Virus record (IMG/VR): IMGVR_UViG_3300020810_001156
Location: 188,604 to 252,603 of that record
Strand: one strand, 5' to 3'
DNA length: 64,000 bases
Part shown: piece after piece, positions 25,312 through 62,625 of the stretch
Numbering within the stretch: position 1 is the first letter of the stretch
Layout of the letters: every line of letters starts with the position of its first letter
Made by a program: the position numbers and the translations under genes
The notes under the pieces: generated by a model
The model's database searches: none
The model's input: only the letters and a program-made list of their open reading frames with translations
What the model was told of the DNA's origin: nothing

Positions 25312-26922
25312 ATGAGAACCTACAATGTAATACTCAAAAAAGGTGTAGATTATGAATCGTTTTGGGATGATATGGAAAATGAAAACGATGGGGGTAATCT
25401 TTATATCCCTAATCGTAGAGTAGATTCTCCTAACCTTAGACCAGATTCACAAAGACAAACTTGGTACACTCTTTCGGATGAAGAAGCTGAAACTGTAAGA
25501 AATGATGAAAGAGTTCTTGCAGTTGAAATTCCACCCGAAGATAGGGATGATATCGTAATTGGACATCATGCAATCCAAGAGGGTGTATTTACCAAAACAA
25601 CTTCTGATAGTGGTAATTATCAAAATTGGGGATTAATAAGAACTTTATCTAAATCAAATAATTATGGTAGTTCAAATACCTCACCAACTACTGAATATCC
25701 ATATTCATTAACTGGTAAGGGGGTTGATGTTGTAATTCAAGATAGTGGTATTCAAATAGACCATCCAGAATGGGCAGATAGATTTGAATCGGTAGATTGG
25801 GATACATGGGGTGCTTTTACACAATCATCAAATCACGATAGAGATTATGATGGACATGGTTCACATTGTGCTGGTATTGTAGCAGGTAAAACATTTGGGT
25901 ATGCTAAAAAAGCAAAAGTATATCATCAAAAGATAAGTGGATTAGAAGGTAGTGGTGATAGTGGAACTGGTATTTCACCAACCTATGCATTTGATGCTAT
26001 TAAAGGTTGGCATAATGCTAAATCAGTTGACCCAAATACTGGGTATGTTAGACCAACTGTGGTAAATATGAGTTGGGGTTATCTGAGAACATTTACAAAT
26101 GCTCAAATATCAAACATAAATTATAGAGGTACTGATTATAGTGGTACTGATATTGATACTACAACTGAAAGAGAAAACAATTACGGATTGATGTATTCAT
26201 TGTATTCAGTATCAGGTCCAACATATGCTAGTAATTTAAGAATAGCATCGGTTGATACTGATATTGAAGAGTTGTTAGAAGCGGGTGTTCATGTGTTTGT
26301 TGCTGCTGGAAATAGGAGTAATAAAGTAGATGAGAGTGGTGGTGCGGATTATGATAATAATTATACACACACATCATCGGGTACAACTTACTATCACAGA
26401 GGTTCTTCTCCATATGGTGATGCAGGGCAAGATGGAACTGGACCAAGAGCAATCATAGTTGGTAATATGGATTCATCAGTACATGATACCACAACTGATA
26501 GAAAAGCAACATCATCGGAAACTGGACCTGGTGTTGATATCTATGCACCTGGTACAAATGTTATGAGTGCAACTTCTAATACAAATAAGTGGGGAAGTGG
26601 TTCTCAAAATTATTATTTGAATTCATCATTTAAGCAAACTAATATATCTGGTACATCTATGGCATCTCCTCAAGTTGCAGGTGTTGCTGCATGTATTTTA
26701 GAATTATATCCACAATGGACACCATCTCAATTAAAACAATGGTTACTGGATAATGCAGGTTCTGCAATCTTAAATACTGGTACTGATAATGATTGGACAA
26801 ATGATAGAAGTTTGAAAGGTGGAGCAGAAAAAGTATTACATTTACCATTTACTTCATCAGAACCTGCAAAAATAAGTGGTTTCGATAATTTAACCTTTAA
26901 CATAAAAATCAAAGAACAATAA
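25312..26922 (+). CDS. Subtilisin-like S8 serine protease
   Basis: Triad motifs VVIQDSG, DGHGSHCAG and SGTSMASPQVAG; oxyanion AAGN; N-terminal prodomain. Confidence 0.92.
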   Translation: MRTYNVILKKGVDYESFWDDMENENDGGNLYIPNRRVDSPNLRPDSQRQTWYTLSDEEAETVRNDERVLAVEIPPEDRDDIVIGHHAIQEGVFTKTTSDSGNYQNWGLIRTLSKSNNYGSSNTSPTTEYPYSLTGKGVDVVIQDSGIQIDHPEWADRFESVDWDTWGAFTQSSNHDRDYDGHGSHCAGIVAGKTFGYAKKAKVYHQKISGLEGSGDSGTGISPTYAFDAIKGWHNAKSVDPNTGYVRPTVVNMSWGYLRTFTNAQISNINYRGTDYSGTDIDTTTERENNYGLMYSLYSVSGPTYASNLRIASVDTDIEELLEAGVHVFVAAGNRSNKVDESGGADYDNNYTHTSSGTTYYHRGSSPYGDAGQDGTGPRAIIVGNMDSSVHDTTTDRKATSSETGPGVDIYAPGTNVMSATSNTNKWGSGSQNYYLNSSFKQTNISGTSMASPQVAGVAACILELYPQWTPSQLKQWLLDNAGSAILNTGTDNDWTNDRSLKGGAEKVLHLPFTSSEPAKISGFDNLTFNIKIKEQ

Positions 26923-26959
26923 CAACTTTTTAGGTTTTTAATATATATTTATAGAGTAG

Positions 26960-29431
26960 ATGGGATGGAGTGAGAAATATAAGAAATCAATAGATTGTAA
27001 CAACCCAAAAGGTTTCAGTCAAAAAGCCCATTGTGCTGGTAAAAAGAAAAACGAAGATATGGTATTTGAAGAAATAACCGAAGATATTCTAAATGAAAAG
27101 CTGATTACCTATGGTAATAGAAAACCATATGGTCAAGTAGTTTTTATGGCAGGTGGAGCTGGTAGTGGTAAAGGATTCGCTATCAAAAACTTTGTAGATT
27201 CTGCATCTTTCAAAATTAGAGATGTGGATGAAATGAAGAAACAACTTCAAATTCTCAATAGATTAGGTAAATTAGATATTAGAAGTATCCTAAAAAAGTA
27301 TGGTAGAAATATCAAACTTAAAGATTTAGATTTAATCAGAAAGATTGAAAAGGATGGGTACAAACTTCAAAACTTTAATCTTAAAAATCCAGACCATGTA
27401 ATGGCCCTTCACATTTTAGTAAAGGCAATGGGTATTAAAGATAATACTTTAGAAAAACTATTATTGGGTAAAAATAATCCTGAAACTCTTCCAAACATTT
27501 TATTTGATATCACCGCAAAGGATGTAACCGATATCACTTCAGTTGTTCCAAAATTAAAAGAAGTTGGATACAAAGCAGATAATATTCACTTAACTTGGGT
27601 ACTTACAAATTATGTAACTGCAATGGTTAATAATAAGAATAGAGCTAGAATGGTACCTGAGGATATCCTTTTAAAAACACATGAAGGTGCTGCAAATACT
27701 ATTTGGGGATTAGTAACTAAAGCTCTTCCAAAAGGAATGAATGGTAGAGTTGATGTAATCCTTAATAACCCAGAACACACTGTATTCTATACTGATACAG
27801 ATGGTAAAACTATTAGTGGTGGTGTAAAGGGATTCCTCTCACTTCCACTTAAAAAAGAAAAGGGTGGTATCTTTCCAGAAAAAGTTTGGAAAGATAAGTT
27901 ATTCAATTGGGTTAAAGATAATGCACCAGAATCAATCACATCAAATATGAAAGAATCAGTAAACGAAGGTAAGAAATCCAAAGATTCTACCGGTGTAAGA
28001 AAAGCAGAAGCTATTCATAATAATGCAGATACAATCATTGATTTGGTACTTAAAGATAAAAAAGATGTTAAAGAAGTAGTAAGTGTAATGGGGCCTGTAT
28101 TGATTAATGCAATAAAAGCAACTTTAAAACATAAGTTCAAACCAATTACTGGTAATGAAGATGCATTAAAAAAGTTTCAATCTAAACTAAAAGATTTCCT
28201 TAAATTCACAGAAGCGTTAGTTAAAAAACCATCAAAGGTTGGTGTTAAAAGACTTGAAACTATGCACAGAGAATGGTGGAATTGGAACCATGGTGCAGAT
28301 GTAGTATTAAATGGAAAAATAGGAAATACTATCATTGAATCAGTAAACGAAGGAAAATTCAAACCATCACAAGTTCGTTCAGCAATCTCAAAAGTTAAAA
28401 AAGGACTAATGAGAAAGTGGAAACAAAAAGGTGGATACGAAAACTTTGGACAAAAAGAACTATCTCAAATGAAAGATAAGTTTGATTACAATGCATATGG
28501 AGATAAGGATGAAAGAGAAATTTCACATATGTTAGATGCATTTGATAATTGGGCAATGAACTACGATGGTAATATGAGAGAAGCAAGAAGGTCAGTAGTT
28601 CACAAAGCTGCAAAGAAAGGAAGTTTTCCAGTATCTTTAGTAGTGGTTAAAAATGGTAAAGTAATTGACCAAGAGTTAGTAAAAACTCCAGAAGCTGTAC
28701 CTGCTGCATTTAATGTTATTCAATCAAAACACAAAGGAGCTACTGTTCATATTGAAGATAAAACAGGTAAAAGATTATTTTCAGAATCAATAGATGAGGG
28801 TATGTTCTCCCTTATAGACCAAATCAGAGATGAATCTAAGAATGTTAAAGATTTTATTAAGAATGTTCTTTCTGATAGAAACTTTAAGGATATGAAAAAC
28901 GATAAACAATTTATCCAATACTTAGGTTCTATCTATGAATCGGTAAACGAAGCAATGGATATCAATGACCCTATCTTAGTAAGATTGAGAGCATCAGCGA
29001 TTGAAAAAGCTGAAAAAGAAAAATTAGCAAAAATAAGAGCAGCCCAAATGAAGAAAAACCAAATGGCTGCTAAAAAACTCCAACAAGCAGAACTCAAAAT
29101 CAAAGCACTCAAAAAGAAGAGAGCAGAGGTAATGAGAGATATGGAACAAGAAGCTGAAGCAGAAGGTGGACCAATCGCTGATAGATATGGTAACTTATTA
29201 AATAAGATTGATAACGATATCATCAAATTGGGAGGTAATCCAATGAGTGAATCAATCGAAGAAAGAATCAATCTATTCGTAGAAGAAAACGTACCAACTA
29301 AACCAGACAAATGGTCATATGCAGTTTCTCAAGCAAAAGAGAAATTTGATGTATATCCATCGGCATATGCAAATGCATGGGCTTCCAAGAAATATAAAGA
29401 ACTTGGTGGTGGTTGGAGAAAGAAAAAGTAA
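26960..29431 (+). CDS. Modular polyprotein-like protein containing a zeta-toxin/AAA_33-like P-loop kinase domain
   Basis: FMAGGAGSGKG, N..R.RMVP; modules separated by ESVNE, ESIDE and ESIEE. Confidence 0.65.
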   Translation: MGWSEKYKKSIDCNNPKGFSQKAHCAGKKKNEDMVFEEITEDILNEKLITYGNRKPYGQVVFMAGGAGSGKGFAIKNFVDSASFKIRDVDEMKKQLQILNRLGKLDIRSILKKYGRNIKLKDLDLIRKIEKDGYKLQNFNLKNPDHVMALHILVKAMGIKDNTLEKLLLGKNNPETLPNILFDITAKDVTDITSVVPKLKEVGYKADNIHLTWVLTNYVTAMVNNKNRARMVPEDILLKTHEGAANTIWGLVTKALPKGMNGRVDVILNNPEHTVFYTDTDGKTISGGVKGFLSLPLKKEKGGIFPEKVWKDKLFNWVKDNAPESITSNMKESVNEGKKSKDSTGVRKAEAIHNNADTIIDLVLKDKKDVKEVVSVMGPVLINAIKATLKHKFKPITGNEDALKKFQSKLKDFLKFTEALVKKPSKVGVKRLETMHREWWNWNHGADVVLNGKIGNTIIESVNEGKFKPSQVRSAISKVKKGLMRKWKQKGGYENFGQKELSQMKDKFDYNAYGDKDEREISHMLDAFDNWAMNYDGNMREARRSVVHKAAKKGSFPVSLVVVKNGKVIDQELVKTPEAVPAAFNVIQSKHKGATVHIEDKTGKRLFSESIDEGMFSLIDQIRDESKNVKDFIKNVLSDRNFKDMKNDKQFIQYLGSIYESVNEAMDINDPILVRLRASAIEKAEKEKLAKIRAAQMKKNQMAAKKLQQAELKIKALKKKRAEVMRDMEQEAEAEGGPIADRYGNLLNKIDNDIIKLGGNPMSESIEERINLFVEENVPTKPDKWSYAVSQAKEKFDVYPSAYANAWASKKYKELGGGWRKKK

Positions 29432-42447: not shown

Positions 42448-43071
42448 ATGGAAAACAAAATGAAAAAATACTTAAATTTATTACTACTTATCATCCTATT
42501 TGGATGTACTGCTGAAGCGCAGGAAATCACTCCATCTCAAGACCTGAGAGAAGAGGTAATTGTGGAAACTCCTATCTTTAAAGTGTGGTACTCTGAAGTG
42601 AAGGAACAACCCACAAAAGTGACCTATACGGTCTTATGTCCTACACCCGGTGTGAGTAGAGATGGATTAGATTTTTATACGGAATCGGATTATCATACTT
42701 CGGATGATGATGATTATTATTCTAATCCTTGGGATAAGGGACATATGGCACCTGCTGCGGCATTTAATTGTAGTAGGGATATGTTGAAACAAACATTTAC
42801 TTATCTAAATTCTGCTCTACAATATGAATCTCTAAATAGAGGAGTTTGGAATAAGTTAGAGGAATTTGAAAGAAATCTTGCTAACTTTTATGAAGTTAAT
42901 GTAGAGATACAAATTAACTTTGTAGAGAATCCACCTAAAGTAAGTGGTGGAGCTTCAATACCCGAATCGTTTTTAAAGATAATTAGATGGGGAGATAAAG
43001 AAGAGAGATTTTTATTTCCTAATCAAAATACTTCGGGAACGGATTGGACTGATTATATAGTAATAGATTAG
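42448..43071 (+). CDS. DNA/RNA non-specific endonuclease (NucA-like), probable lipoprotein
   Basis: DKGHMAPA, N..LQ...LNRG.W..LE; lipobox LFGC. Confidence 0.88.
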   Translation: MENKMKKYLNLLLLIILFGCTAEAQEITPSQDLREEVIVETPIFKVWYSEVKEQPTKVTYTVLCPTPGVSRDGLDFYTESDYHTSDDDDYYSNPWDKGHMAPAAAFNCSRDMLKQTFTYLNSALQYESLNRGVWNKLEEFERNLANFYEVNVEIQINFVENPPKVSGGASIPESFLKIIRWGDKEERFLFPNQNTSGTDWTDYIVID

Positions 43072-43090: not shown

Positions 43091-44431
43091 ATGATAACAC
43101 CCTTTTCGGTATTAGATACTCGAACAAAGGAATGGAAGAAAAAGAAAGAAGAGTGGATTGCTACCTACGGAATTCAATCTGAGTTAGGTAGGGAGGATAC
43201 CCAATCGAAAACCCAATTTTGGGATTCTCCAACTAACGTTTCTATTTTTGACCCGGTTCTTTGTGAAGTAATGTACGATTGGTTCGTACCGAAGGGTGGA
43301 AAAATCCTAGACCCATTTGCTGGTGGAAGTGTAAGAGGAATCGTAGCTGAAGAAATGGGGTACAAATATGTAGGTATCGACCTTTCTAAAAAACAAATCC
43401 TTGCAAATCAAAAACAAAGTTCAAAACCCTTTTGGATTGATGGAGATGCTGATAAAGTTCTCTTTAATTTAGAAGGTGGATTCGATTTTGTATTTACCTG
43501 CCCTCCTTATTATGATTTAGAAGTGTATTCGGATTCTCCTTATGATTTATCGAATATGAAAGAAAAACAATTTGATGATAAATTGGATTCTATCATTTAT
43601 AAATCTGCTCTGAAGTTGAAAGAGAACCGATTTTTTGGGATTGTGGTAAGTGAGGTGAGAAATCCTTCAACGACTGGGAATTATTCCATAGGTAATTATA
43701 GAGGATTGGTTTGGAAAACAATAAAGATGTGTGAATCACACGGATTGAAGTTCTATAATGATATGATATTATTCAATTCCCAACATCAGGCATCTCGAGT
43801 AGGTAAAACTTACTTTGAAAGAAATAGAAAAATACCATCAGTACATCAAAATGTATTGATATTTGTTAAGGGGAATCCCGATATTGCTACCGAAGAAATC
43901 AAAGGTGGTGAGTTTGAATGTCAAGTAAAGGGTACAAAATACTTGACTTTCAGACACGCTGCTATTTCAATCGACCCAAACAAATTAGTTGCTTCTGAAG
44001 TTAAAAGAAGATGTGTAAGTAGAAAATCAAAATATAAAGATTGGCAGATAATTGGTGAGGAGACTCGACCAGAGATAAAATATGTTATAGGAGATATTCC
44101 ATTTGAATCACCTTTACAAGTTTTGGAAGTTATTCCTGAATTAACTGAATCACAATGTAGAAATTACTTTGAATCAAACTCTAAGAAGTTTCAACATTGG
44201 AAAAGAGTGAATCCATCGGATTGGAATATATCTTATAAACAAATGGAGGATTTATGGAATTTATCTGATAAAGCAGGTGGAATAAGTATTTACTCCGAAA
44301 CCATTCAATGTGGTGATAAAAAATTCATTTCAGTTAACGAAGCTGCAAAGGAATTTGGAATAAGTGGAGAACGAGTTAGACAAAAGTTAAGGTCTGATAA
44401 TTATAAAGACTGGAAATATTTGGATAATTAA
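43091..44431 (+). CDS. N4/N6 DNA methyltransferase with C-terminal NUMOD1-like HTH repeats
   Basis: DPFAGGS, GIDL, TCPPY; tail FISVNEAAKEFGIS. Confidence 0.8.
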   Translation: MITPFSVLDTRTKEWKKKKEEWIATYGIQSELGREDTQSKTQFWDSPTNVSIFDPVLCEVMYDWFVPKGGKILDPFAGGSVRGIVAEEMGYKYVGIDLSKKQILANQKQSSKPFWIDGDADKVLFNLEGGFDFVFTCPPYYDLEVYSDSPYDLSNMKEKQFDDKLDSIIYKSALKLKENRFFGIVVSEVRNPSTTGNYSIGNYRGLVWKTIKMCESHGLKFYNDMILFNSQHQASRVGKTYFERNRKIPSVHQNVLIFVKGNPDIATEEIKGGEFECQVKGTKYLTFRHAAISIDPNKLVASEVKRRCVSRKSKYKDWQIIGEETRPEIKYVIGDIPFESPLQVLEVIPELTESQCRNYFESNSKKFQHWKRVNPSDWNISYKQMEDLWNLSDKAGGISIYSETIQCGDKKFISVNEAAKEFGISGERVRQKLRSDNYKDWKYLDN

Positions 44432-44468: not shown

Positions 44469-46445
44469 ATGAAAAAAATATTGGTAATTATGTTGAGTAT
44501 GGTGAGTATTTCCCTATCTGCTCAACAAAGTGATACGACTATCGTATTAGATGATGTAGTAATAACTGCTACTAGAAGTGAGATAAGTTTGGAAGATTCA
44601 CCCGTACCAACGGAAGTGATTGGAAAGAAAGAGATTGAAGAACTAAATTTAATTACGATGCAAGACCTCCTTAATTTAAAAGGATTTGTTGCACCGATGA
44701 AAAGTGGAGGTTTCCAATTAAGAGGATTATCTTCCGAATATGTTTTAGTAATGATTGATGGAGTTCCAATCGCAGGTAGAGAAAGTGGTGCATTAGATAT
44801 CTCGAATATCAACCTTGCAAATGTGGAAAGAGTTGAAATTGTAAAAGGTTCAATGTCTGCACTTTGGGGTAACCATGCAATTGGTGGTGTAATCAACATC
44901 ATTACAAAGAAGAGTGGAGAACCATCTATAATGTTGAATACACAATATGGAACAAACAACACATCATTAGTTGGATTAACTTCAACAGTGGGTAAAGATA
45001 AATTTAAGAACATATCTAAGATTACATTAGGAAGTTCAGATGGTTTTGATATCGACCCATTAACTTATGGTCAAAATCAATTACCATTTAAGTTGTTGAA
45101 TATTACCAATAGAACTACTTACGATGATGGAACGAACCAATACTCATTAGGATTAACTCACTTAGGAAAAACATCCGAAGGTGAAACTGTAACTGAAACA
45201 AATACTCAGGGGCAATTAGTACCAGTTGATGAGGTAAACGAATCCCAAAACTTTATTGTTGATTTGAACTACAAAAGAAGTTTTGGTAAATATGTGAGTG
45301 AGATTAAAGTATCTAATTCAAACTTCAGTAACTCAAACAAATCTTCTTTTGAATATTTCGGACAACAAGTAGTTCAGTTAGATGAGAGTGACCAAAACAT
45401 TTTCCAACCTGAGATGATTAACAATTACAATTGGAATTCTAAAAACTCAACTACATTTGGATTTGGTTATAGAGGACACGATTACGATACTGAAAGATAT
45501 GGTGGTGATAAATCTCTAAACTCTTACTTTGGATATGTTCAACATTATCTAAACTTAGATAAACTAAATTTAGTAGTTGGTGGTAGATACGATAACTATT
45601 CAGATTTTGGAAACAACTTCTCACCAAAAGTATCTGCAACTTATGATTTGGGGAAATTCAAATTGAGTTCATCGGTTGGTTATGGATTCAGAGTACCTGA
45701 TTTTAGAACCTTATACATTAACTATGGTGGATTCTCATCTGGGTATTGGGTATTAGGTTCGTATAACATTGAAGAACAAATCAATTTTTATTCTCAACAA
45801 AATCTAATTGCATTTGTATCTTATGGATTAGAAGATATTACTCAACTAAGTCCTGAAACTTCTATCTCATATGATTTTGGTGTATCGTATAAATTAAATG
45901 AGAGTAGTAAAGTAGGATTAAACTTATTTAGAACCAATACAACTGATTTGATTGAATCAGTTCTTGCTGGAATGTTTGTAAACCAAACTTTACTTTTTGG
46001 ATACACAAATATCTCAGAAGCAACATTTACAGGTTTAGAGTTTGAAACTTTGATTCAAAAAGATAGATTTAGATTTGATGGTTCTTATCAGTATTTAGAA
46101 ACTGAAGCAAATAAAGCAGATGGAACTGAATTCTTTTTGGGTGAAAGACCTAAACATTTAGTTAACCTTGCAACTACTTATACATTGAAGAATGGTTTAT
46201 CATTAACTTTAAATGGAGTTCATAAATCAGAGTACTTCTTTAGAGATGTTGATAGAAGTGGAACTCAGGACGCAAATGAGTTTGTACCTTCTCACACATT
46301 GTTGAATACTTTGATAAGTTCTCCTGTTGTTAAGAATATGACAGTTGGTGTTGGTGTTAACAATATTTTAGATTTTACTAATGTAGAGTATCTAAAACAA
46401 CAAAATGGTAGAACCATTTTTGGAAAAGTAACTTATAAATTTTAA
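44469..46445 (+). CDS. TonB-dependent outer-membrane receptor (CirA/BtuB/HmuR-like)
   Basis: Signal peptide, VVITATR, plug IDGVP...VERVEIVKGS.SALWG..AIGGVINIITK, beta-barrel, C-terminal YKF. Confidence 0.92.
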   Translation: MKKILVIMLSMVSISLSAQQSDTTIVLDDVVITATRSEISLEDSPVPTEVIGKKEIEELNLITMQDLLNLKGFVAPMKSGGFQLRGLSSEYVLVMIDGVPIAGRESGALDISNINLANVERVEIVKGSMSALWGNHAIGGVINIITKKSGEPSIMLNTQYGTNNTSLVGLTSTVGKDKFKNISKITLGSSDGFDIDPLTYGQNQLPFKLLNITNRTTYDDGTNQYSLGLTHLGKTSEGETVTETNTQGQLVPVDEVNESQNFIVDLNYKRSFGKYVSEIKVSNSNFSNSNKSSFEYFGQQVVQLDESDQNIFQPEMINNYNWNSKNSTTFGFGYRGHDYDTERYGGDKSLNSYFGYVQHYLNLDKLNLVVGGRYDNYSDFGNNFSPKVSATYDLGKFKLSSSVGYGFRVPDFRTLYINYGGFSSGYWVLGSYNIEEQINFYSQQNLIAFVSYGLEDITQLSPETSISYDFGVSYKLNESSKVGLNLFRTNTTDLIESVLAGMFVNQTLLFGYTNISEATFTGLEFETLIQKDRFRFDGSYQYLETEANKADGTEFFLGERPKHLVNLATTYTLKNGLSLTLNGVHKSEYFFRDVDRSGTQDANEFVPSHTLLNTLISSPVVKNMTVGVGVNNILDFTNVEYLKQQNGRTIFGKVTYKF

Positions 46446-46452
46446 AAACTAT

Positions 46453-47619
46453 ATGAAAAAGATGATTTTATGTGGATTGATGTTGCTGATGGGTACATCA
46501 TCTTTTGCTTCTCACCTATTGGGTGGGTACATTCAAACAACTCAAAGGAATTCAAGTGATACTGTTGATGTGGTAGTAACTTTATTTACTGACCCTCAAG
46601 GAATTGGTAATCCAACTTCTATTTCTTTAGCGGAATGGAAATTGGTAAATGGTTTTTATCAAACCAATGGTAACTTTACACTTTCTCAACAACTAACTGG
46701 AAGTTGGCAAGGTGTAAATGTGTATGTGTATAGTGGTATTAGAATATTAAGTAGTGGTGATTATCGTTTCATCTACACCAATTGTTGTAGAGGAATGTTG
46801 AGTAACGCATCATCTGCAATGAATAGTAACTTTACTATTGCAATGGATTACAAAAAATCACTTCTACCAAACTCAGCACCTATCATTCTCAACCCACTTC
46901 CAATCAATTGGGTAAATGGTGATACTGCACAATCAATTCTATTTGCGGTAGATGTAGATGGTGATTCGGTAATGGTTGAAAAGGATGATGCTATTAACCA
47001 ACACTCAAACAATACATTTGTACCACTTTCACCATTTACTCAATTAGGTAGTTATGGTAGTTATTATGTGGATGTAAATGGAACAATTGAATGGGCTCCA
47101 AATACCAATGGAACATTTGGTACTGGATATAAAGTAAGTGAAATCAGAAATGGACAAGTTATTGGAGTGAATAGAATTCAACAAGTCTATATGGTTCAAC
47201 CTGGTTCAACACCAAATGTACCAAACTTAAACCCAATGATTACAGCCGATTTGGTAAATGGTGATTCACTTCAATATACCACATCCATTTCAAACGCAAC
47301 TTCAACTGAGTTGATTATTCCAAATGTAGATGTAACTCAAACTTCAGATTCAACTTGGACTTTGAATAATCTTCAAATGGGAACATACAATGGAGTATTG
47401 AGAGCTAGTAGTAACTCATCAAATATGGATTATTACATTACTTTAGTGGTAACATCTACAATCGGAATCGAAGAGAATGTTTCAGATATGGATACTTCTT
47501 ACGAAGTTTACGATTGGACTGGAAAATACATTGGTAAAGATGTAAATTGGGAGCAATTAAATGGTTTGTATATAATTAAACATAGTAACGGAACAATAGA
47601 AAAAATCTACAATATATGA
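46453..47619 (+). CDS. Secreted protein with a T9SS-type C-terminal domain
   Basis: Signal peptide + ASHLLGG, NCCR, NSAP, DVDGDS; tail IGIEE..YDWTGK..GLYIIK..GTIEK. Confidence 0.65.
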   Translation: MKKMILCGLMLLMGTSSFASHLLGGYIQTTQRNSSDTVDVVVTLFTDPQGIGNPTSISLAEWKLVNGFYQTNGNFTLSQQLTGSWQGVNVYVYSGIRILSSGDYRFIYTNCCRGMLSNASSAMNSNFTIAMDYKKSLLPNSAPIILNPLPINWVNGDTAQSILFAVDVDGDSVMVEKDDAINQHSNNTFVPLSPFTQLGSYGSYYVDVNGTIEWAPNTNGTFGTGYKVSEIRNGQVIGVNRIQQVYMVQPGSTPNVPNLNPMITADLVNGDSLQYTTSISNATSTELIIPNVDVTQTSDSTWTLNNLQMGTYNGVLRASSNSSNMDYYITLVVTSTIGIEENVSDMDTSYEVYDWTGKYIGKDVNWEQLNGLYIIKHSNGTIEKIYNI

Positions 47620-48473
47620 AGATATTAGTAACTGGCGGGAACGGCTTTATCGGTTCAAATCTAATTAAGAAACTATTATCTGAAGGACACGAAGTGGTAT
47701 CTTTGGATGATTTATCAACTGGGTTAAAAGAGTACGAAGTTGAAGGATGTAATTATGTTTATGGAGATATTGAAAATCTTCTGTATTGGAAAGGTGAATC
47801 TTTTGATTTATGTTATCATCTCGCTGCGTTAGCTAGAATCGTTCCATCATTTGAGGACCCGATGGAAACCTTTAGAGTAGACACTCAAGGTGTAATGGTA
47901 GTTGCTGAATGGGCTAGACAAAATAATGTAAAGGTTGTATATAGTGGTTCATCATCTCGTTGGTGTAATCCCGAAACTTCACCATATGCAACTTGTAAAA
48001 AATTAGGTGAAGATATTCTCAAAATGTATCGAACTGCTTATGGATGTGATTTTGAAATCGCAAGATTCTATAATGTATATGGACCAAATGAATTGGTTGA
48101 TGGACAGTGGGCAGCTGTGATTGGTATTTGGAGAAAACAAATCGAAGAAGGTAAACCAATCACAATTATATCAGATGGAGAACAAAGAAGAGATTTTACT
48201 CATGTAGATGATATTTGTGATGCTCTATATAAGATTGGTACAAGTGATAAAAAGCATGAAGATGCTTGGGAATTGGGTACAGGTATGAATTACTCAATTA
48301 ATGAAGTATTTGATTTCTTCCAAGAATCATTTGGTGATTTGGAAAAAGTACATCTGCCTGATGTACCAGGAAATTATAGACAAACTCTTAGAGAGAATGA
48401 TGATACTTTGGAGAGATTGGAATGGGCACCCAAAGATAGTTTAAGAGATTATATTTTATCTCTTAACAAGTAA
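47616..48473 (+). CDS. NAD-dependent sugar epimerase/dehydratase
   Basis: TGGNGFIG, YATCK, RFYNVYGP, RDFTHV. Confidence 0.9.
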   Translation: MKILVTGGNGFIGSNLIKKLLSEGHEVVSLDDLSTGLKEYEVEGCNYVYGDIENLLYWKGESFDLCYHLAALARIVPSFEDPMETFRVDTQGVMVVAEWARQNNVKVVYSGSSSRWCNPETSPYATCKKLGEDILKMYRTAYGCDFEIARFYNVYGPNELVDGQWAAVIGIWRKQIEEGKPITIISDGEQRRDFTHVDDICDALYKIGTSDKKHEDAWELGTGMNYSINEVFDFFQESFGDLEKVHLPDVPGNYRQTLRENDDTLERLEWAPKDSLRDYILSLNK

Positions 48474-48505
48474 AAAGAGGTTTAACGAATAAAATATTAT
48501 CGGTT

Positions 48506-48700
48506 ATGAAATATGGTATATTGTTTATCATTGTTATTTTATTTTCTGGTTTTTCACAAACTGAAAGTGAGTGGGAAAAGAAATACAACTCGGTGAAGGA
48601 AGAAAGAGATATGTACAAAAAGACATCAGAGATGTTGTTGAAAAATTGGAAAGAGTGTGAAGAAAAAGTAACAAAGATTATTAGTGAGCAAGTTAATTAA
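48506..48700 (+). CDS. Small secreted/membrane coiled-coil protein
   Basis: N-terminal hydrophobic stretch. Confidence 0.4.
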   Translation: MKYGILFIIVILFSGFSQTESEWEKKYNSVKEERDMYKKTSEMLLKNWKECEEKVTKIISEQVN

Positions 48701-49238
48701 TTTATTTGGAGGACCAGGCATAGGAAAATCAGGCATATCAGCTGGATTAACTTATGAATTAAAGAAAAGACATATTAGTTGTAATAACCCATATGAGTTT
48801 CCAAAGAGATTAGCATGGGATAACAACATACCAGCGATACAAGACCAATTGTATGTATTCGCTAACCAACATAGAGGAATCGCAGAATCCTTTGGTAAAG
48901 TAGATTATATCGTTATTGATTCACCAATTCTATTTTCTACAATTTATCACACATATTATACTGAAGGGTATCCTGCTGAGTTTTATGGTGAAGAGTTTCA
49001 CAAATTTGTGATTCATCTTCACAAACAATACACAAGTATCAATATTCTTTTGGAAAGAGGTGATACAATTCACAATGATGATGAAAGATTCCAAAATCTA
49101 AAACAATCATTGGAGATAGATGATTTGTGTAAAAAAATATTAAAAGATAATGATGAAACTTATCACACAATCAAAGTAGATGAGTTTACTGTTGAAAAGA
49201 TTTTAACATTATTGGATTTAAATAATGAAAAAAGATAA
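48684..49238 (+). CDS. P-loop NTPase (NadR/AAA_28-like)
   Basis: INLFGGPGIGKS, IDSP, R.Q. Confidence 0.75.
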   Translation: MSKLINLFGGPGIGKSGISAGLTYELKKRHISCNNPYEFPKRLAWDNNIPAIQDQLYVFANQHRGIAESFGKVDYIVIDSPILFSTIYHTYYTEGYPAEFYGEEFHKFVIHLHKQYTSINILLERGDTIHNDDERFQNLKQSLEIDDLCKKILKDNDETYHTIKVDEFTVEKILTLLDLNNEKR

Positions 49239-49430
49239 ACGCTGGAATAGGGAAATGAAAAGGTATCGTATCATTGAACACAAACATCGGGATAAATCTG
49301 TGTTCATTGTTGAGTGGAATGATAGATGGTTTTTAGGATTGTGGGGAAGATGGCATGGTAAATTTCAGAGTTTAAAAATTGAAGAAGCTATTTCTAAAAT
49401 ACAAAGATTAGTACACATTAAAATAAATAA

Positions 49431-50333
49431 ATGAGAATAGTAGTTACAGGCGGTTGTGGGTTTATTGGTTCATCTTTTGTAAATCTTATAAATAAAGTTC
49501 CAAATACTGAAATAGTTGTTATAGATAAATTAACCTATGCAGCTAATCCATTTTTAATTTCCAAAGATATACCTCTTATTAAAAAAGATATTTGTGATAT
49601 CACTTTAGATGATATTGGATATGCTGATTATATTGTAAACTTTGCTGCTGAATCTCATGTTGATAATTCAATCTCAAATGGATTACCTTTTGTGAAAACT
49701 AATGTAGAAGGTACATTCAATATGTTAGAGGTTGCTAGAAAAATTCCTAACCTAAAGAAGTTCATTCAAATATCTACTGATGAGGTTTATGGTGATATGG
49801 AAAGTAGAAATATTATGGAAGCTAATGAAAACACATCATTAGAACCATCCTCTTATTATTCAGCTACTAAAGCAGCAGCTGACCATTTAGTTGAATCTGC
49901 TGGTAGAACTTATGGTTTACCTTATTTAATTACGAGAACTTGTAACAATTATGGTGTAAATCAACACCACGAAAAATTCTTACCTACAATAGCTAAATCA
50001 ATCAAAGAAGATAAACCAATTCCTCTTTATGGAGATGGTAAACAAATGAGAGAGTGGATTTGGGTTGAAGATAATGTTCAATTGATTTATGATTTGATGA
50101 TATCACAAAACGGAATATGGAATATTGGTAGTGGAGATACTTGGACTAATAGAAGTATCGTTCAACAAATTGGAGTGATTCTAAATAAAAAAGTAAAGTT
50201 AGAGCATGTTGAAGATAGATTAGGACATGATAGAAGGTACTCAATAAATTTCAGTAAATTGATGCACTTCAAAAATAGCTATAACATAACCACAAAAAAT
50301 TTAGAAAAATTTCTTACAGAAACATTTGGATAA
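49431..50333 (+). CDS. rfbB: dTDP-glucose 4,6-dehydratase
   Basis: DKLTYA, FAAESHVD, STDEVYG, YSATK, NNYG, DRLGHDRRY. Confidence 0.92.
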   Translation: MRIVVTGGCGFIGSSFVNLINKVPNTEIVVIDKLTYAANPFLISKDIPLIKKDICDITLDDIGYADYIVNFAAESHVDNSISNGLPFVKTNVEGTFNMLEVARKIPNLKKFIQISTDEVYGDMESRNIMEANENTSLEPSSYYSATKAAADHLVESAGRTYGLPYLITRTCNNYGVNQHHEKFLPTIAKSIKEDKPIPLYGDGKQMREWIWVEDNVQLIYDLMISQNGIWNIGSGDTWTNRSIVQQIGVILNKKVKLEHVEDRLGHDRRYSINFSKLMHFKNSYNITTKNLEKFLTETFG

Positions 50334-56568: not shown

Positions 56569-58197
<1,629 letters not shown>

Positions 58198-59684: not shown

Positions 59685-60515
59685 ATGAGAAGAATAATCA
59701 TTTTAATACTTTTAGGATTTCTATTAACATCTTGTGGAAGTATGTATCAATTTTCCACAATCAATCACACACCAGAATATATTGGTGATGTGAGAGTTGA
59801 TAAGATTGAAAATAGAATGGATTTGAATTGGAAGTTAAGAACTGATAATCAATTCAGATGGAATTTTGCTCAATATGCACAGAACCAACCTTTGAGTTGG
59901 TATTACGATAACTCTTGGGAGTTAGGATTATATACGAACCCATACTTTACTACTTGGGATTTTTACTTCAATAGAACTCAACTTTGGTGGGATTGGAGTT
60001 TCAACTATCCTTACAATTGGGGATGGAACCGTTGGTATCCATTTGGATACAATAGATGGGGTTGGAACTATGGATTCAGAAACAATTGGGCATGGGGATA
60101 TAATCCTTACAGATGGAATAGTGGATTTGTTCATAATCCTCAACCAATAAGAAATAGAAATGTTGTTGTGGTGAATGGTAGAAGAGGTTCTAACAACACA
60201 AACATTATAATAAACAGAGGCAGGTCGAATAATTCGACCACCAATAATTCCAATGTTAGAGTTAGAAGGTATGATAACAAAGATAGAATTGTACCTCGTA
60301 GAGATTATAACGATATAAAGAGTAGAGTTAGAACACCTATAAACAATAACTCAACACCTACGAGAAATTATAATGTACCAAGACCTAATAACAATAACAA
60401 TATAAGAAGAACTCCACCACCGCCTCCAACAAGACCTGTGGTTAGACCAAATGTAAGTAGAGGTTCAAATGTAGGTAGAAGTTCATCTCAGGTTATCAAA
60501 AGAAATAATGAGTAA
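59685..60515 (+). CDS. Lipoprotein with W/Y/N-rich and R/N/P-rich low-complexity regions
   Basis: Lipobox LTSC; WGWN repeats; disordered tail. Confidence 0.65.
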   Translation: MRRIIILILLGFLLTSCGSMYQFSTINHTPEYIGDVRVDKIENRMDLNWKLRTDNQFRWNFAQYAQNQPLSWYYDNSWELGLYTNPYFTTWDFYFNRTQLWWDWSFNYPYNWGWNRWYPFGYNRWGWNYGFRNNWAWGYNPYRWNSGFVHNPQPIRNRNVVVVNGRRGSNNTNIIINRGRSNNSTTNNSNVRVRRYDNKDRIVPRRDYNDIKSRVRTPINNNSTPTRNYNVPRPNNNNNIRRTPPPPPTRPVVRPNVSRGSNVGRSSSQVIKRNNE

Positions 60516-62625
60516 TCTAAAACTAAACATACCAAAGGATGTAATCAAGATACATAAGGCATTCAAAAAGAATGGTAAAAAACTTTATGTAGTTGGTGGT
60601 GCGGTTAGAGATGCCATCTTAGGTAAATCACCTAAAGATTTCGATTTAGCAACTGATGCAAAACCTGAAGAAGTTGAGAAGATAGCAAAAGATAATGGAA
60701 TATCATCTAAACCACTTGGAAAGGCATTTGGTGTTGTTTCACTTTTTATTAATAATGAAGAATATGAGATTGCAACTTTCAGAAAAGATATCGGAAAAGG
60801 TAGGAGACCTTCATCGGTAGATTACACAGATATACATGGTGATGTTAAGAGAAGGGATTTAACTGTAAATGCCTTATTCTATGACATCGATAGAAAAGAG
60901 ATTGTAGATTTAGTTGGTGGTATAGAAGATTTGAAAAAGAAAAACATCAGAACTGTTGGTAAAGCAAAAGAAAGATTTGATGAGGACCCGTTAAGAAAGT
61001 TAAGAGCATTAAGATTTTGGACAAGATTGGGTGGTAAGTTAGATAAAGAGTTATTAGATGCTTTACAAAATGACCCATCAATAAAAGGAGTTAGTTCTGA
61101 AAGAATTAGAGATGAATTCTTAAAATCAATCAAATCATCAAAGAATACAAAAGAGTATATGGAGATGTGTGATAAGATTGGATTTACTTCTCAGATACTT
61201 CCAAATCTAAAAGTATCAAAACCATATCCTAAAACAAACGATTATATTTTATTCTTAGCATGGGTATTAAGAAAGAACTCACCAGTTGTACTATCTAAAA
61301 TTCTAAATAAGATAAACTATACAAATGATGAAAGAGATGAAATAGTTTATCTAAATACACTTCAAGATTTCAAACCTGAAAATGTTTTAGTTTATAAAAA
61401 AGGGCAGAGAAAAGCAGAAGATAGTAGAATAATTACCTTTGGTAAAATGATTGGTAAAGATTTTACTAAGTTTGTAAAGTTCAAAACATCAGTAACTGGT
61501 AAGGATGTTCCATCAGATATTAAAGGACCTGAAATTGGATTGTGGATAGCAAGTAAAGAAAAGGAAAACTATCTAAACGAAGGTTTGAAAGAATTAGGAA
61601 TCACCGATTTCAAATCACTCTTTAAGAAAATGCCATCTGATTTACAAAAGAGAGTGTATAACTTAAAGAACTTTGGACAGAGAATTGATAAACACCCTGA
61701 AGGGAATGTACTTAAACATACAATCACAGTTGTAAATCGTTCAATCAAAGAAGATGATATCGATATTGCAATCGCAGCAATGTTCCACGATATAGGAAAA
61801 GATGAAACTGCTGGTATCCATCCAAAGAAAGGACATATTACACATTTTGGACACGAAAAAGTATCAGCTAATTTAGTTAAGAAATATAAAAATTGGATTG
61901 AATCAGTTGGTGGTAACACTGCCAATGTTTATTACATTGTAAAGAATCATATGAGATTCAAACAATTAGATAATATGAGAATCCAAAAGGTAATGAAGTT
62001 AAAGGCATTCAGAGCATTTGATAAGTTAGGTAAATTCTCTAAACACGATAGAAGTGGGTTAGATATAAGTGAAGATAAAATTCCTGGCGGATTAGCTGGT
62101 GAGATGAATATCTACGATATTGCAAATATGCACAAAGTTGATATTGATGATTTAAATAAGGAATTACAAATGGGTATTAAAGTTGAAATGGAACACACTT
62201 CAGATAGAGAGATAGCAAAAGAAATTGCATTAGACCATTTATATGAGGACCCAAAATATTACACTAAACTTGCCGATATTGAAGAAAGTAAAGGTAAATT
62301 AAGACCAGCTGATAAGTTAAGAAGAAAAAGAGCCATGGCTGGTAAGAAAGCTGCTATTCAAAGAAGGAAGTTAAGAACAATGAAGAGGAAAAAACCTCTT
62401 GCTAAACTAAAAAAGATTGCATATAAAATGGCATATTTACAAGTTTATAAACAATTTATGGAGGATTTATTTCCTGGTATGAATAAAAGTGATTTATCCA
62501 TTCAACAGGCAAAGATAGTTCATAAGAATGTATTAAGAAAGAAAGGTAGAGTTTTAAAACGAGCTAAGTTCAAATTCTTACCAGCTCTAAGAGCAAAAGA
62601 AGCAGAAAAATTTAAAAAGGATTAA
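60508..62625 (+). CDS. cca: CCA-adding/polyA polymerase-family nucleotidyltransferase fused to HD, DUF5661-like and basic modules
   Basis: VGGAVRD, DFDLAT, RRDLTVNA, RFDEDPLR.LR; HPEG..HT..HDIGK; GIKVEMEH..IALDHL.E.P.YY. Confidence 0.8.
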   Translation: MSNLKLNIPKDVIKIHKAFKKNGKKLYVVGGAVRDAILGKSPKDFDLATDAKPEEVEKIAKDNGISSKPLGKAFGVVSLFINNEEYEIATFRKDIGKGRRPSSVDYTDIHGDVKRRDLTVNALFYDIDRKEIVDLVGGIEDLKKKNIRTVGKAKERFDEDPLRKLRALRFWTRLGGKLDKELLDALQNDPSIKGVSSERIRDEFLKSIKSSKNTKEYMEMCDKIGFTSQILPNLKVSKPYPKTNDYILFLAWVLRKNSPVVLSKILNKINYTNDERDEIVYLNTLQDFKPENVLVYKKGQRKAEDSRIITFGKMIGKDFTKFVKFKTSVTGKDVPSDIKGPEIGLWIASKEKENYLNEGLKELGITDFKSLFKKMPSDLQKRVYNLKNFGQRIDKHPEGNVLKHTITVVNRSIKEDDIDIAIAAMFHDIGKDETAGIHPKKGHITHFGHEKVSANLVKKYKNWIESVGGNTANVYYIVKNHMRFKQLDNMRIQKVMKLKAFRAFDKLGKFSKHDRSGLDISEDKIPGGLAGEMNIYDIANMHKVDIDDLNKELQMGIKVEMEHTSDREIAKEIALDHLYEDPKYYTKLADIEESKGKLRPADKLRRKRAMAGKKAAIQRRKLRTMKRKKPLAKLKKIAYKMAYLQVYKQFMEDLFPGMNKSDLSIQQAKIVHKNVLRKKGRVLKRAKFKFLPALRAKEAEKFKKD

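What the first reader, a model, noticed from the sequence alone, without database searches (positions are those of the whole stretch)
46453..47619. Phage protein apparently built for export by the host type IX secretion system
Seen: Sec signal, SHLLGG/CCR N-domain like Bacteroidota surface proteins, and a short CTD-like tail; it starts 7 nt after the TonB receptor gene. Established: T9SS is essentially Bacteroidota-specific and uses a C-terminal sorting domain. Inference: the phage uses the host T9SS to decorate the infected cell surface, perhaps as the receptor's partner.
Basis: partly seen in the sequence, partly recalled or inferred. Interest (0 to 1): 0.6.

Follow-up and report, generated by a model that had tools for sequence, protein, structure and literature searches.

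The report
Phage surface protein with shortened T9SS tail
A giant T4-like phage of Bacteroidota carries an exported, adhesin-like protein copied from its hosts' type IX secretion cargo, but its export tag is cut down to about 40 residues; it belongs to a large phage-only family and is not a conserved partner of the neighbouring TonB receptor.

Summary
The ORF at 46453-47619 (+) is real. It encodes 388 aa with a conserved Sec signal peptide and starts 7 nt after a TonB-dependent receptor gene. The window lies in a 252.6-kb T4-like phage.

Standard models (PF18962, TIGR04183, TIGR04131) give no hit.
- **N-terminal module.** The invariant ASHLxGG and CCR motifs are shared with hundreds of Bacteroidota proteins that end in a full type A or type B T9SS sorting domain.
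- **Tail.** The last ~40 residues are a truncated homologue of the type A domain. Profile-profile comparison gives probability 92%, P 6e-7. The only superposable PDB folds are T9SS CTDs. The glycine/tyrosine motif and the near-terminal lysine are kept; the YPNP strand and the next strand are missing.
- **Cellular counterparts.** Similar short tails end large proteins in SprA-positive Bacteroidota genomes.

The receptor-partner idea is not supported. In seven other distinct genomic contexts, only the nearest relative has the receptor. The recurrent neighbour is an exported Endonuclease_NS gene.

The protein belongs to a phage family of at least 171 sequence clusters. A related contig shows the body exchanged between conserved signal and tail ends.

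T9SS-dependent export is inferred, not shown. Phage-encoded T9SS cargo has been reported before (Bellas 2020). I rate this a new variant of a known kind.

The parts
46453..47619 (+). Whole gene: 388-aa exported, adhesin-like phage protein (P0001). Stop codon at 47617-47619.
46453..46509 (+). Sec (signal peptidase I type) signal peptide, residues 1-19. Predicted cleavage is SFA|SH.
   Evidence: Read from the sequence. Conserved in alignment A1. Low-pLDDT N-terminal helix. 97% DNA identity to L021 here although the body has diverged.
46510..46860 (+). Domain 1 (residues 20-136): beta-sandwich that starts with the invariant SHLxGG and ends with the invariant CCR. It is the head module shared with Bacteroidota T9SS cargo.
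46861..47202 (+). Domain 2 (residues 137-250): beta-sandwich with an invariant D-x-DGDS motif (cadherin/Big_9-like calcium-site pattern) and an EYRNG...IG motif.
   Evidence: The calcium-binding reading is inference from the motif.
47203..47460 (+). Domain 3 (residues 251-336): I-set-like Ig domain. It is the most variable part and is absent from the ~305-aa phage relatives.
   Evidence: (Z 9, rmsd 2.3-2.7, ~82 aa)
47461..47499 (+). Linker (residues 337-349). The conserved 'STIGIEE' junction spans the end of domain 3 (S335, T336) and the start of this linker. A similar GIE(D/E)N junction precedes the full CTD in the cellular relative P0161.
47500..47616 (+). Short tail (residues 350-388): four beta-strands, homologous to the C-terminal two-thirds of the T9SS type A CTD. 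It keeps the G-x-Y motif and the invariant lysine K384. The YPNP strand and the following strand are missing.
44469..46445 (+). Upstream neighbour: 658-aa TonB-dependent receptor (Plug plus barrel) with a signal peptide ending SLSA|QQ. Adjacency is conserved only in the closest relative.
42448..43071 (+). Endonuclease_NS family nuclease with a lipoprotein signal (..ILFGC). Its homologue lies directly before the family gene in five other contigs, so it is the recurrent neighbour.
43091..44431 (+). DNA methyltransferase gene. Together with the receptor gene it separates the nuclease gene from the family gene in this lineage.
47616..48473 (+). Downstream NAD-dependent sugar epimerase gene. It overlaps the stop of the family gene by 4 nt and is probably co-transcribed.

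Best explanation
The gene encodes a phage accessory protein made in the infected Bacteroidota cell. It is exported across the inner membrane by Sec. It is built from three beta-sandwich domains: an H/CC-motif head, a DGDS cadherin-like domain and a variable Ig domain. The body descends from a cellular family of adhesin-like T9SS cargo.

Its C-terminus is a minimised type A sorting domain. It keeps the strands carrying the G-x-Y motif and the near-terminal lysine, and it has lost the first two strands.

The most likely mechanism is that this mini-tail still delivers the protein to the host SprA/PorV translocon. The protein would then be released or displayed on the infected cell surface and change the cell's adhesive or receptor landscape, for example in superinfection exclusion or attachment.

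Shown here: homology of body and tail, the signal peptide, the phage-only family, and cassette exchange of the body. Inferred: use of the T9SS, the final location and the biological role. It is not a dedicated partner of the adjacent TonB receptor.
For: - **Structure matches.** The best non-viral ESM Atlas neighbours are a Bacteroidota 475-aa cluster that is 100% PF18962 (TM 0.77) and CHU_C type B cargo of 750-925 aa (TM 0.72-0.75 by query).
- **Sequence relatives.** The profile search gave 941 hits. The ~455-485-aa relatives share the N-terminal H-x-x-GG and CCRN motifs and carry PF18962 at 1e-7 to 6e-13.
- **Tail homology.** The tail-only profile against the CTD-only profile gives probability 92%, P 6.4e-7, mapped to CTD columns 24-79 of 79. 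The reversed control gives probability 10%.
- **PDB sequences.** The best single-stretch hits of the tail profile are RgpB CTD structures 5hfs and 7pq4, at E 0.23-0.39.
- **Tail fold.** The tail-only model has pLDDT 77. Its only superposable PDB hits are T9SS CTDs: NucA in the translocon (8glk_D, probability 0.99, TMq 0.53, rmsd 2.7 A), and RgpB (7pq4 and 5ag8, probability 0.90-0.92).
- **Conserved residues.** The G of DWxG and the K of EK are invariant in 40 tails.
- **A longer tail in the family.** Family member P0118 carries a longer YPNP-type tail at the same place, with PF18962 at E 3e-4.
- **Cellular short tails.** Short tails without YPNP end 691-1425-aa proteins in SprA-positive Bacteroidota genomes.
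- **Literature.** The last 22 aa of a type A CTD (motifs D and E) sufficed for GFP secretion, and the motif E lysine is required (PMC10202324). An almost invariant lysine lies near the CTD end (PMC10994853). Phage-encoded type A cargo was already seen in 'Cryophage' (PMC7468147).
Against: - No curated model (PF18962, TIGR04183, TIGR04131) reaches even E<=10 on the tail.
- The tail has 4 strands and about 40 aa. Type A CTDs are described as 7-strand sandwiches recognised by shape in the SprA/PorV pocket (PMC10994853), so a partial domain may not fit.
- The Foldseek and PDB-sequence E-values are not significant on their own.
- The host is unknown, so nothing shows that it has a T9SS.
- No other protein of this phage shares the tail, and no PF18962 match was found in the phage.
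- No expression or localisation data are available.
Confidence: 0.5

Rival explanations
1. Relic tail. The protein is Sec-exported but the cut-down CTD no longer engages the T9SS. The protein acts in the periplasm or at the inner face of the outer membrane, and the tail serves only as a small folding or oligomerisation unit.
For: The tail fails all curated CTD models. It lacks the YPNP strand and the following strand. CTD recognition is largely by shape of the whole domain (PMC10994853).
Against: The tail is kept in all 3-domain and 2-domain phage versions, with an invariant G and K. It stays 82-95% identical in DNA where the body has been swapped. Comparable short tails end large cellular proteins in SprA-positive genomes. 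Motifs D and E alone have been reported as sufficient (PMC10202324).
Confidence: 0.25
2. Receptor partner. The protein is the surface-exposed binding partner of the phage TonB-dependent receptor encoded 7 nt upstream, in the manner of SusD or BtuG.
For: The 7-nt spacing and the absence of a terminator suggest co-transcription. The arrangement is kept in the 91%-identical relative. Both proteins are exported.
Against: None of the six more distant contexts has a receptor. The gene follows an Endonuclease_NS gene in five contigs. It sits between the ribonucleotide reductase subunit genes in another phage and between TspO and ClpP genes in another. It is not a lipoprotein. Its cellular relatives are stand-alone T9SS cargo.
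Confidence: 0.07
3. Decoy. The truncated CTD binds but does not clear the SprA/PorV translocon. This would throttle host T9SS output (gliding adhesins or phage receptors) during infection, as a form of superinfection exclusion.
For: The tail keeps the lysine and hydrophobic strands that contact PorV and SprA but lacks part of the fold (PMC10994853). To my own knowledge (not checked here), Flavobacterium phage sensitivity depends on T9SS/gliding genes.
Against: There is no direct evidence. Similar short tails on large cellular proteins argue that they are ordinary working signals. A conserved three-domain body would be unnecessary for a plug.
Confidence: 0.07
4. Virion Ig-like decoration protein; the N-terminal hydrophobic stretch is not a working signal peptide.
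For: Ig-like domains are common on phage particles (own knowledge). PDB matches are generic Ig arrays.
Against: A canonical signal peptide is conserved across the family. The gene lies among nucleotide- and sugar-metabolism accessory genes, not structural genes. The cellular relatives are secreted cargo.
Confidence: 0.03

Closest known systems
Bacteroidota T9SS type A cargo of ~455-485 aa with an N-terminal A[ST]H-x-x-GG / CCRN head (unnamed family; e.g. the 475-aa Taibaiella soli ORF in L016, and P0161)
   Same: Signal peptide, head domain with the same invariant motifs, DGDS domain, EYRNG motif, the GIE(D/E)N junction, and a C-terminal sorting region. TM 0.77 to the cluster model.
   Different: The cellular proteins carry a full ~75-aa PF18962 domain with the YPNP strand. 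Identity is only about 28%. The phage protein is ~80 aa shorter and its tail has ~40 aa.
T9SS type A C-terminal domain (PF18962 / TIGR04183; structures RgpB 5hfs, 5ag8 and 7pq4; NucA and RemZ in the translocon, 8glk and 8gl8)
   Same: Position at the extreme C-terminus after a Sec-exported passenger. Homology to CTD columns 24-79. The G-x-Y strand and the near-terminal lysine are present. The fold superposes at rmsd 2.7-3.5 A.
   Different: It lacks the YPNP strand and the next strand, giving 4 instead of 7 strands. It scores below every curated threshold.
'Cryophage' T9SS cargo genes (Bellas et al. 2020, PMC7468147)
   Same: Phage-encoded proteins with T9SS sorting domains that vary between phage variants (flexible genes). 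This matches the cassette exchange seen here.
   Different: Those are enzymes or PA14 proteins with recognisable full type A domains in a different phage. This is an adhesin-like family with a minimised tail in T4-like jumbo phages.
Gliding-motility-associated / CHU_C (type B CTD, PF13585) surface proteins of Bacteroidota
   Same: The N-terminal ~340 residues have the same predicted architecture (TM 0.72-0.75 by query).
   Different: They are 750-925 aa with a type B sorting domain. No PF13585 or TIGR04131 signal is found in the phage protein.

Membership tests
T9SS type A sorting domain (PF18962 / TIGR04183) | Match to the curated HMM above its cut-off | tested here: not met
   No hit at E<=1 on the whole protein or at E<=10 on the tail alone. 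Of 30 family members only P0118 hits, at E 3e-4 and below the cut-off.
T9SS type A sorting domain (PF18962 / TIGR04183) | Seven-strand beta-sandwich of about 70-100 residues at the extreme C-terminus | tested here: not met
   The tail has about 40 residues and four strands. Profile alignment shows CTD columns 1-23 missing. What remains superposes on solved CTDs.
T9SS type A sorting domain (PF18962 / TIGR04183) | C-terminal motifs D (G-x-Y hydrophobic strand) and E (conserved lysine a few residues from the end) | tested here: met
   The GLYII strand is conserved and K384 is invariant in A1 and A2. Motif definitions are taken from PMC10202324 and PMC10994853.
T9SS type A sorting domain (PF18962 / TIGR04183) | N-proximal motif B (YPNP-type strand) | tested here: not met
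   Absent from P0001 and from all short-tail members. Present in P0118, P0129 and the cellular relatives.
T9SS cargo (functional class) | N-terminal Sec signal peptide | tested here: met
   Sequence features and conservation. No dedicated predictor was available.
T9SS cargo (functional class) | Host possesses a T9SS, and secretion depends on it | not testable with these tools
   The host is unknown. Bacteroidota is inferred from the relatives. Cellular genomes with similar short tails have SprA.
T9SS type B sorting domain (PF13585 / TIGR04131) | Match to the curated HMM | tested here: not met
   No hit.
Surface partner of a TonB-dependent transporter (SusD/BtuG-like logic) | Conserved gene adjacency with the transporter, and a lipoprotein anchor | tested here: not met
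   Adjacency is found only in the window and its 91% relative and is absent in six other contexts. There is no lipobox cysteine at the cleavage site.

The most novel reading that the evidence does not exclude
The ~40-residue tail is a natural minimal T9SS signal, a short class that current HMMs miss. It is used both by a large family of jumbo-phage proteins and by some cellular Bacteroidota cargo. Phages exploit it to place exchangeable adhesin-like bodies on the infected cell, or, in the boldest form, to jam the translocon and so exclude competing phages.
Probability: 0.3. Interest if true: 0.75.

Novelty: new variant of a known kind. Interest (0 to 1): 0.5.

Why it matters
If the mini-tail works, it defines the smallest natural T9SS type A signal. 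Current annotation pipelines would then overlook a class of cargo, phage and cellular alike.

It would also show that large phages of environmental Bacteroidota routinely remodel the host surface through the host's own secretion system. The passenger body would be swapped between phage variants. This makes phage use of the T9SS, and the minimal requirements of CTD recognition, directly testable with a short fusion tag.

Tried and rejected
- **Family scans.** Pfam, NCBIfam and PHROGs on the whole protein and on tails alone gave nothing.
- **Cultured phages.** tblastn against phage records gave no match.
- **PDB.** The whole-family profile found nothing among PDB sequences. Whole-model Foldseek and VIA-align returned only generic Ig arrays, which say nothing about function.
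- **Second tail-bearing protein in this phage.** None was found. PF18962 gave no match in the genome, although that search rang only weakly in its control genomes. A home-made CTD HMM found only a weak CTD-like 125-aa lipoprotein.
- **IMG/VR scan.** It returned only three loci.
- **Species-genome scan.** It returned only a 28%-identical Taibaiella protein, so no close cellular copy was found in the genomes searched.
- **Promoters and terminators.** The scan was uninformative for promoters, with counts below the shuffles.
- **Complex prediction.** I did not run it. The host PorV and SprA are unknown, and I do not claim receptor binding.
- **Thioester or metal-site reading of the H / CC / Q residues.** I considered it but could not test it without model coordinates.

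Full report
**1. What is there**

The ORF 46453-47619 on the + strand encodes 388 residues. The TonB-dependent receptor ORF upstream (Plug plus barrel) stops at 46445, and the ATG follows after 7 nt. The downstream NAD-dependent epimerase gene overlaps the stop codon by 4 nt. No terminator-like site lies between 42254 and 50500, so co-transcription is likely; this is an inference.

The window is the last 64 kb of a 252.6-kb IMG/VR virus record. That record has a T4-type major capsid protein gp23 and gp32. All long ORFs in the window run on one strand. So this is a T4-like jumbo phage.

**2. Checking the three observations**

*Signal peptide.* The sequence reads MKK, then a hydrophobic core, then SFA|SH. 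All 30 aligned homologues have the equivalent.

*N-terminal motifs.* A19, S20, H21, L22, G24, G25, C111, C112 and R113 are invariant in the family.

PF18962, TIGR04183, TIGR04131 and PF13585 give nothing on the whole protein at E<=1. They also give nothing on the tail alone at E<=10.

**3. What the body is**

The word search found 171 clusters at 50% identity or more. The listed hits are about 380-435 aa, none carries a Pfam domain, and all come from metagenomes.

The AlphaFold model (pLDDT 75) shows three beta-sandwich domains followed by a four-strand tail. The PDB searches return only generic Ig arrays. The ESM Atlas is more informative:
- The best match is a 100%-viral cluster of 400 aa.
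- Next is a Bacteroidota 475-aa cluster in which every member has PF18962 (TM 0.77).
- Then come 750-925-aa Bacteroidota proteins with the type B CHU_C domain (TM 0.72-0.75 by query).
- Two viral clusters of about 300 aa lack the C-terminal part.

The exhaustive profile search gave 941 hits at E<=1e-3. The ~455-485-aa relatives start their mature chain with A[ST]H-x-x-GG. They keep CCRN, DGDS and EYRNG, and they end in PF18962 at 1e-7 to 6e-13.

One cultured example is a 475-aa ORF of Taibaiella soli, at 28% identity. No close cellular copy was found in one genome per species. Only 7 of 201 sampled Bacteroidota genomes matched the phage profile at 1e-5.

So the protein is a phage branch of a Bacteroidota T9SS-cargo family.

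**4. What the tail is**

Within the family, P0118 carries a longer YPNP-type tail at the same position, with PF18962 at E 3e-4. The ~305-aa two-domain phage versions keep the same short tail directly after domain 2.

I compared a profile of 103 short tails with a profile of 62 full CTDs from the cellular relatives:
- With the linker included, the probability was 87% and P was 4e-6.
- With tail only against CTD only, the probability was 92% and P was 6.4e-7. The tail mapped to CTD columns 24-79 of 79.
- The reversed control gave probability 10%.

The tail therefore corresponds to the C-terminal two-thirds of the domain. It has lost the YPNP strand and the next strand, and the middle loop is shortened.

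In 40 diverse tails, the G of DWxG and the K of EK (fifth residue from the end) are invariant.

Two independent checks point the same way, although neither is significant alone:
- The tail profile's best single-stretch PDB sequence hits are the RgpB CTD structures 5hfs and 7pq4, at E 0.23 and 0.39, aligned to their C-terminal parts.
- A tail-only model (pLDDT 77) superposes only on T9SS CTDs. These are NucA bound in the translocon (8glk_D, probability 0.99, TMq 0.53, rmsd 2.7 A), RgpB (7pq4 at 0.92 and 5ag8 at 0.90), and RemZ (8gl8_D at 0.60). The E-values are 0.18-0.7.

The tail profile also hits 23 of 401 Bacteroidota genomes, always 1-6 residues from a C-terminus. Some hits lie inside ordinary YPNP domains. 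Others (open frames of 744, 1425 and 691 aa in L024, L026 and L033) are short tails without YPNP, like the phage's. PF18962 misses those as well. Those genomes encode SprA.

*Literature.* The last 22 residues of a type A CTD (motifs D and E) sufficed to secrete GFP, and the motif E lysine is required (review PMC10202324). An almost invariant, functionally important lysine lies near the CTD end. However, the CTD is recognised mainly through its shape in the SprA/PorV pocket (PMC10994853). The tail therefore keeps the parts reported as most important for secretion, but it is not a complete domain.

**5. Neighbourhood**

The 91%-identical relative keeps the order nuclease, methylase, TonB receptor, family gene, epimerase. 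Other contexts differ:
- The family gene directly follows an Endonuclease_NS gene in five contigs.
- It lies between the small and large ribonucleotide reductase subunit genes in a 142-kb phage contig with gp32, a RecA-like gene (faint RecA_N match) and DnaB. That contig also encodes a protein with a full PF18962 domain.
- The long-tail member lies between TspO and ClpP genes.

The window's nuclease has a lipoprotein signal. The receptor has a signal peptide followed by Gln, and its look-alikes are all from Bacteroidota.

The recurrent neighbour is thus an exported nuclease. In this lineage the receptor and the methylase appear to have been inserted between the two genes.

**6. Cassette exchange**

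A contig encoding a 64%-identical homologue (L021) was compared with the window at the DNA level:
- 97% identical over the signal-peptide codons.
- 48-74% over the body.
- 82-95% from the start of the tail into the epimerase gene.

The body has therefore been exchanged, or has diverged rapidly, between conserved ends. Flexible T9SS cargo genes were described in 'Cryophage' (PMC7468147).

**7. Verdict**

*Shown.* This is a Sec-exported phage protein. Its body is homologous to Bacteroidota T9SS cargo. Its tail is a truncated homologue of the type A sorting domain. It belongs to a large phage-only family and is not tied to the TonB receptor.

*Inferred.* The tail still works as a T9SS signal (about even odds), and the protein alters the infected cell's surface.

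*Rivals.* A relic tail with a periplasmic role; a translocon decoy; a receptor partner; a virion decoration protein.

Phage T9SS cargo has been reported before, so this is a new variant of a known kind. What is new is the minimised tail and its cellular counterparts, which standard models do not see.

Noticed in passing
window 42448-43071: Phage Endonuclease_NS nuclease with a lipoprotein signal peptide (..ILFGC). Its homologue sits directly upstream of the family gene in five other phage contigs. An exported phage nuclease paired with the adhesin-like protein may form a functional module.
   Followed up: partly
window 44469-46445: Phage-encoded 658-aa TonB-dependent receptor. Its best NCBIfam similarities are to BtuB and haem receptors, all far below cut-off. 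Its signal peptide is followed by Gln. PHROG 5687 shows such receptors exist in other phages. In the relative L010 the last ~56 residues are in another frame, which may be a frameshift or an assembly error.
   Followed up: partly
window 46443-47620 versus L021: Mosaic identity to a related contig: 97% over the signal-peptide codons, 48-74% over the body, and 82-95% from the tail into the next gene. This suggests cassette-like replacement of the passenger domains.
   Followed up: partly
phage genome 24696-33258 (outside the window; G000:C1): A run of eight consecutive ORFs with signal-peptide-like or lipoprotein-like N-termini, several cleaving before Gln. It includes a 125-aa lipoprotein (26851-27228) with a weak CTD-like beta-sandwich match (E 3e-6 to a home-made CTD profile). 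The phage encodes about 20 candidate exported proteins.
   Followed up: partly
L024, L026, L033 (cellular Bacteroidota genomes G120, G076, G250): Large cellular proteins (691-1425-aa frames) end in ~45-residue tails of the same short type, without a YPNP strand, and PF18962 does not detect them. This may be an unannotated short class of T9SS signal.
   Followed up: partly
window 43091-44431: A 446-aa DNA methyltransferase with a weak C-terminal match to the I-TevI DNA-binding domain (E 1e-3). This hints at a mobile-element-derived fusion next to the inserted receptor gene.
   Followed up: no
window 56572-58197, 60508-62625, 47616-50333: Accessory genes: GroEL, a tRNA nucleotidyltransferase, two sugar-nucleotide epimerase/dehydratase genes (including a dTDP-glucose 4,6-dehydratase) and an AAA-type ATPase. 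No tRNA genes were found in the window.
   Followed up: no
P0001 residues H21, Q31, Q86, C111, C112, R113 (window 46513-46791): An invariant histidine one residue after the predicted cleavage site, together with an invariant vicinal Cys-Cys-Arg. Both are also conserved in the cellular relatives. This suggests a metal or covalent-chemistry site in the head domain; its function is unknown.
   Followed up: no
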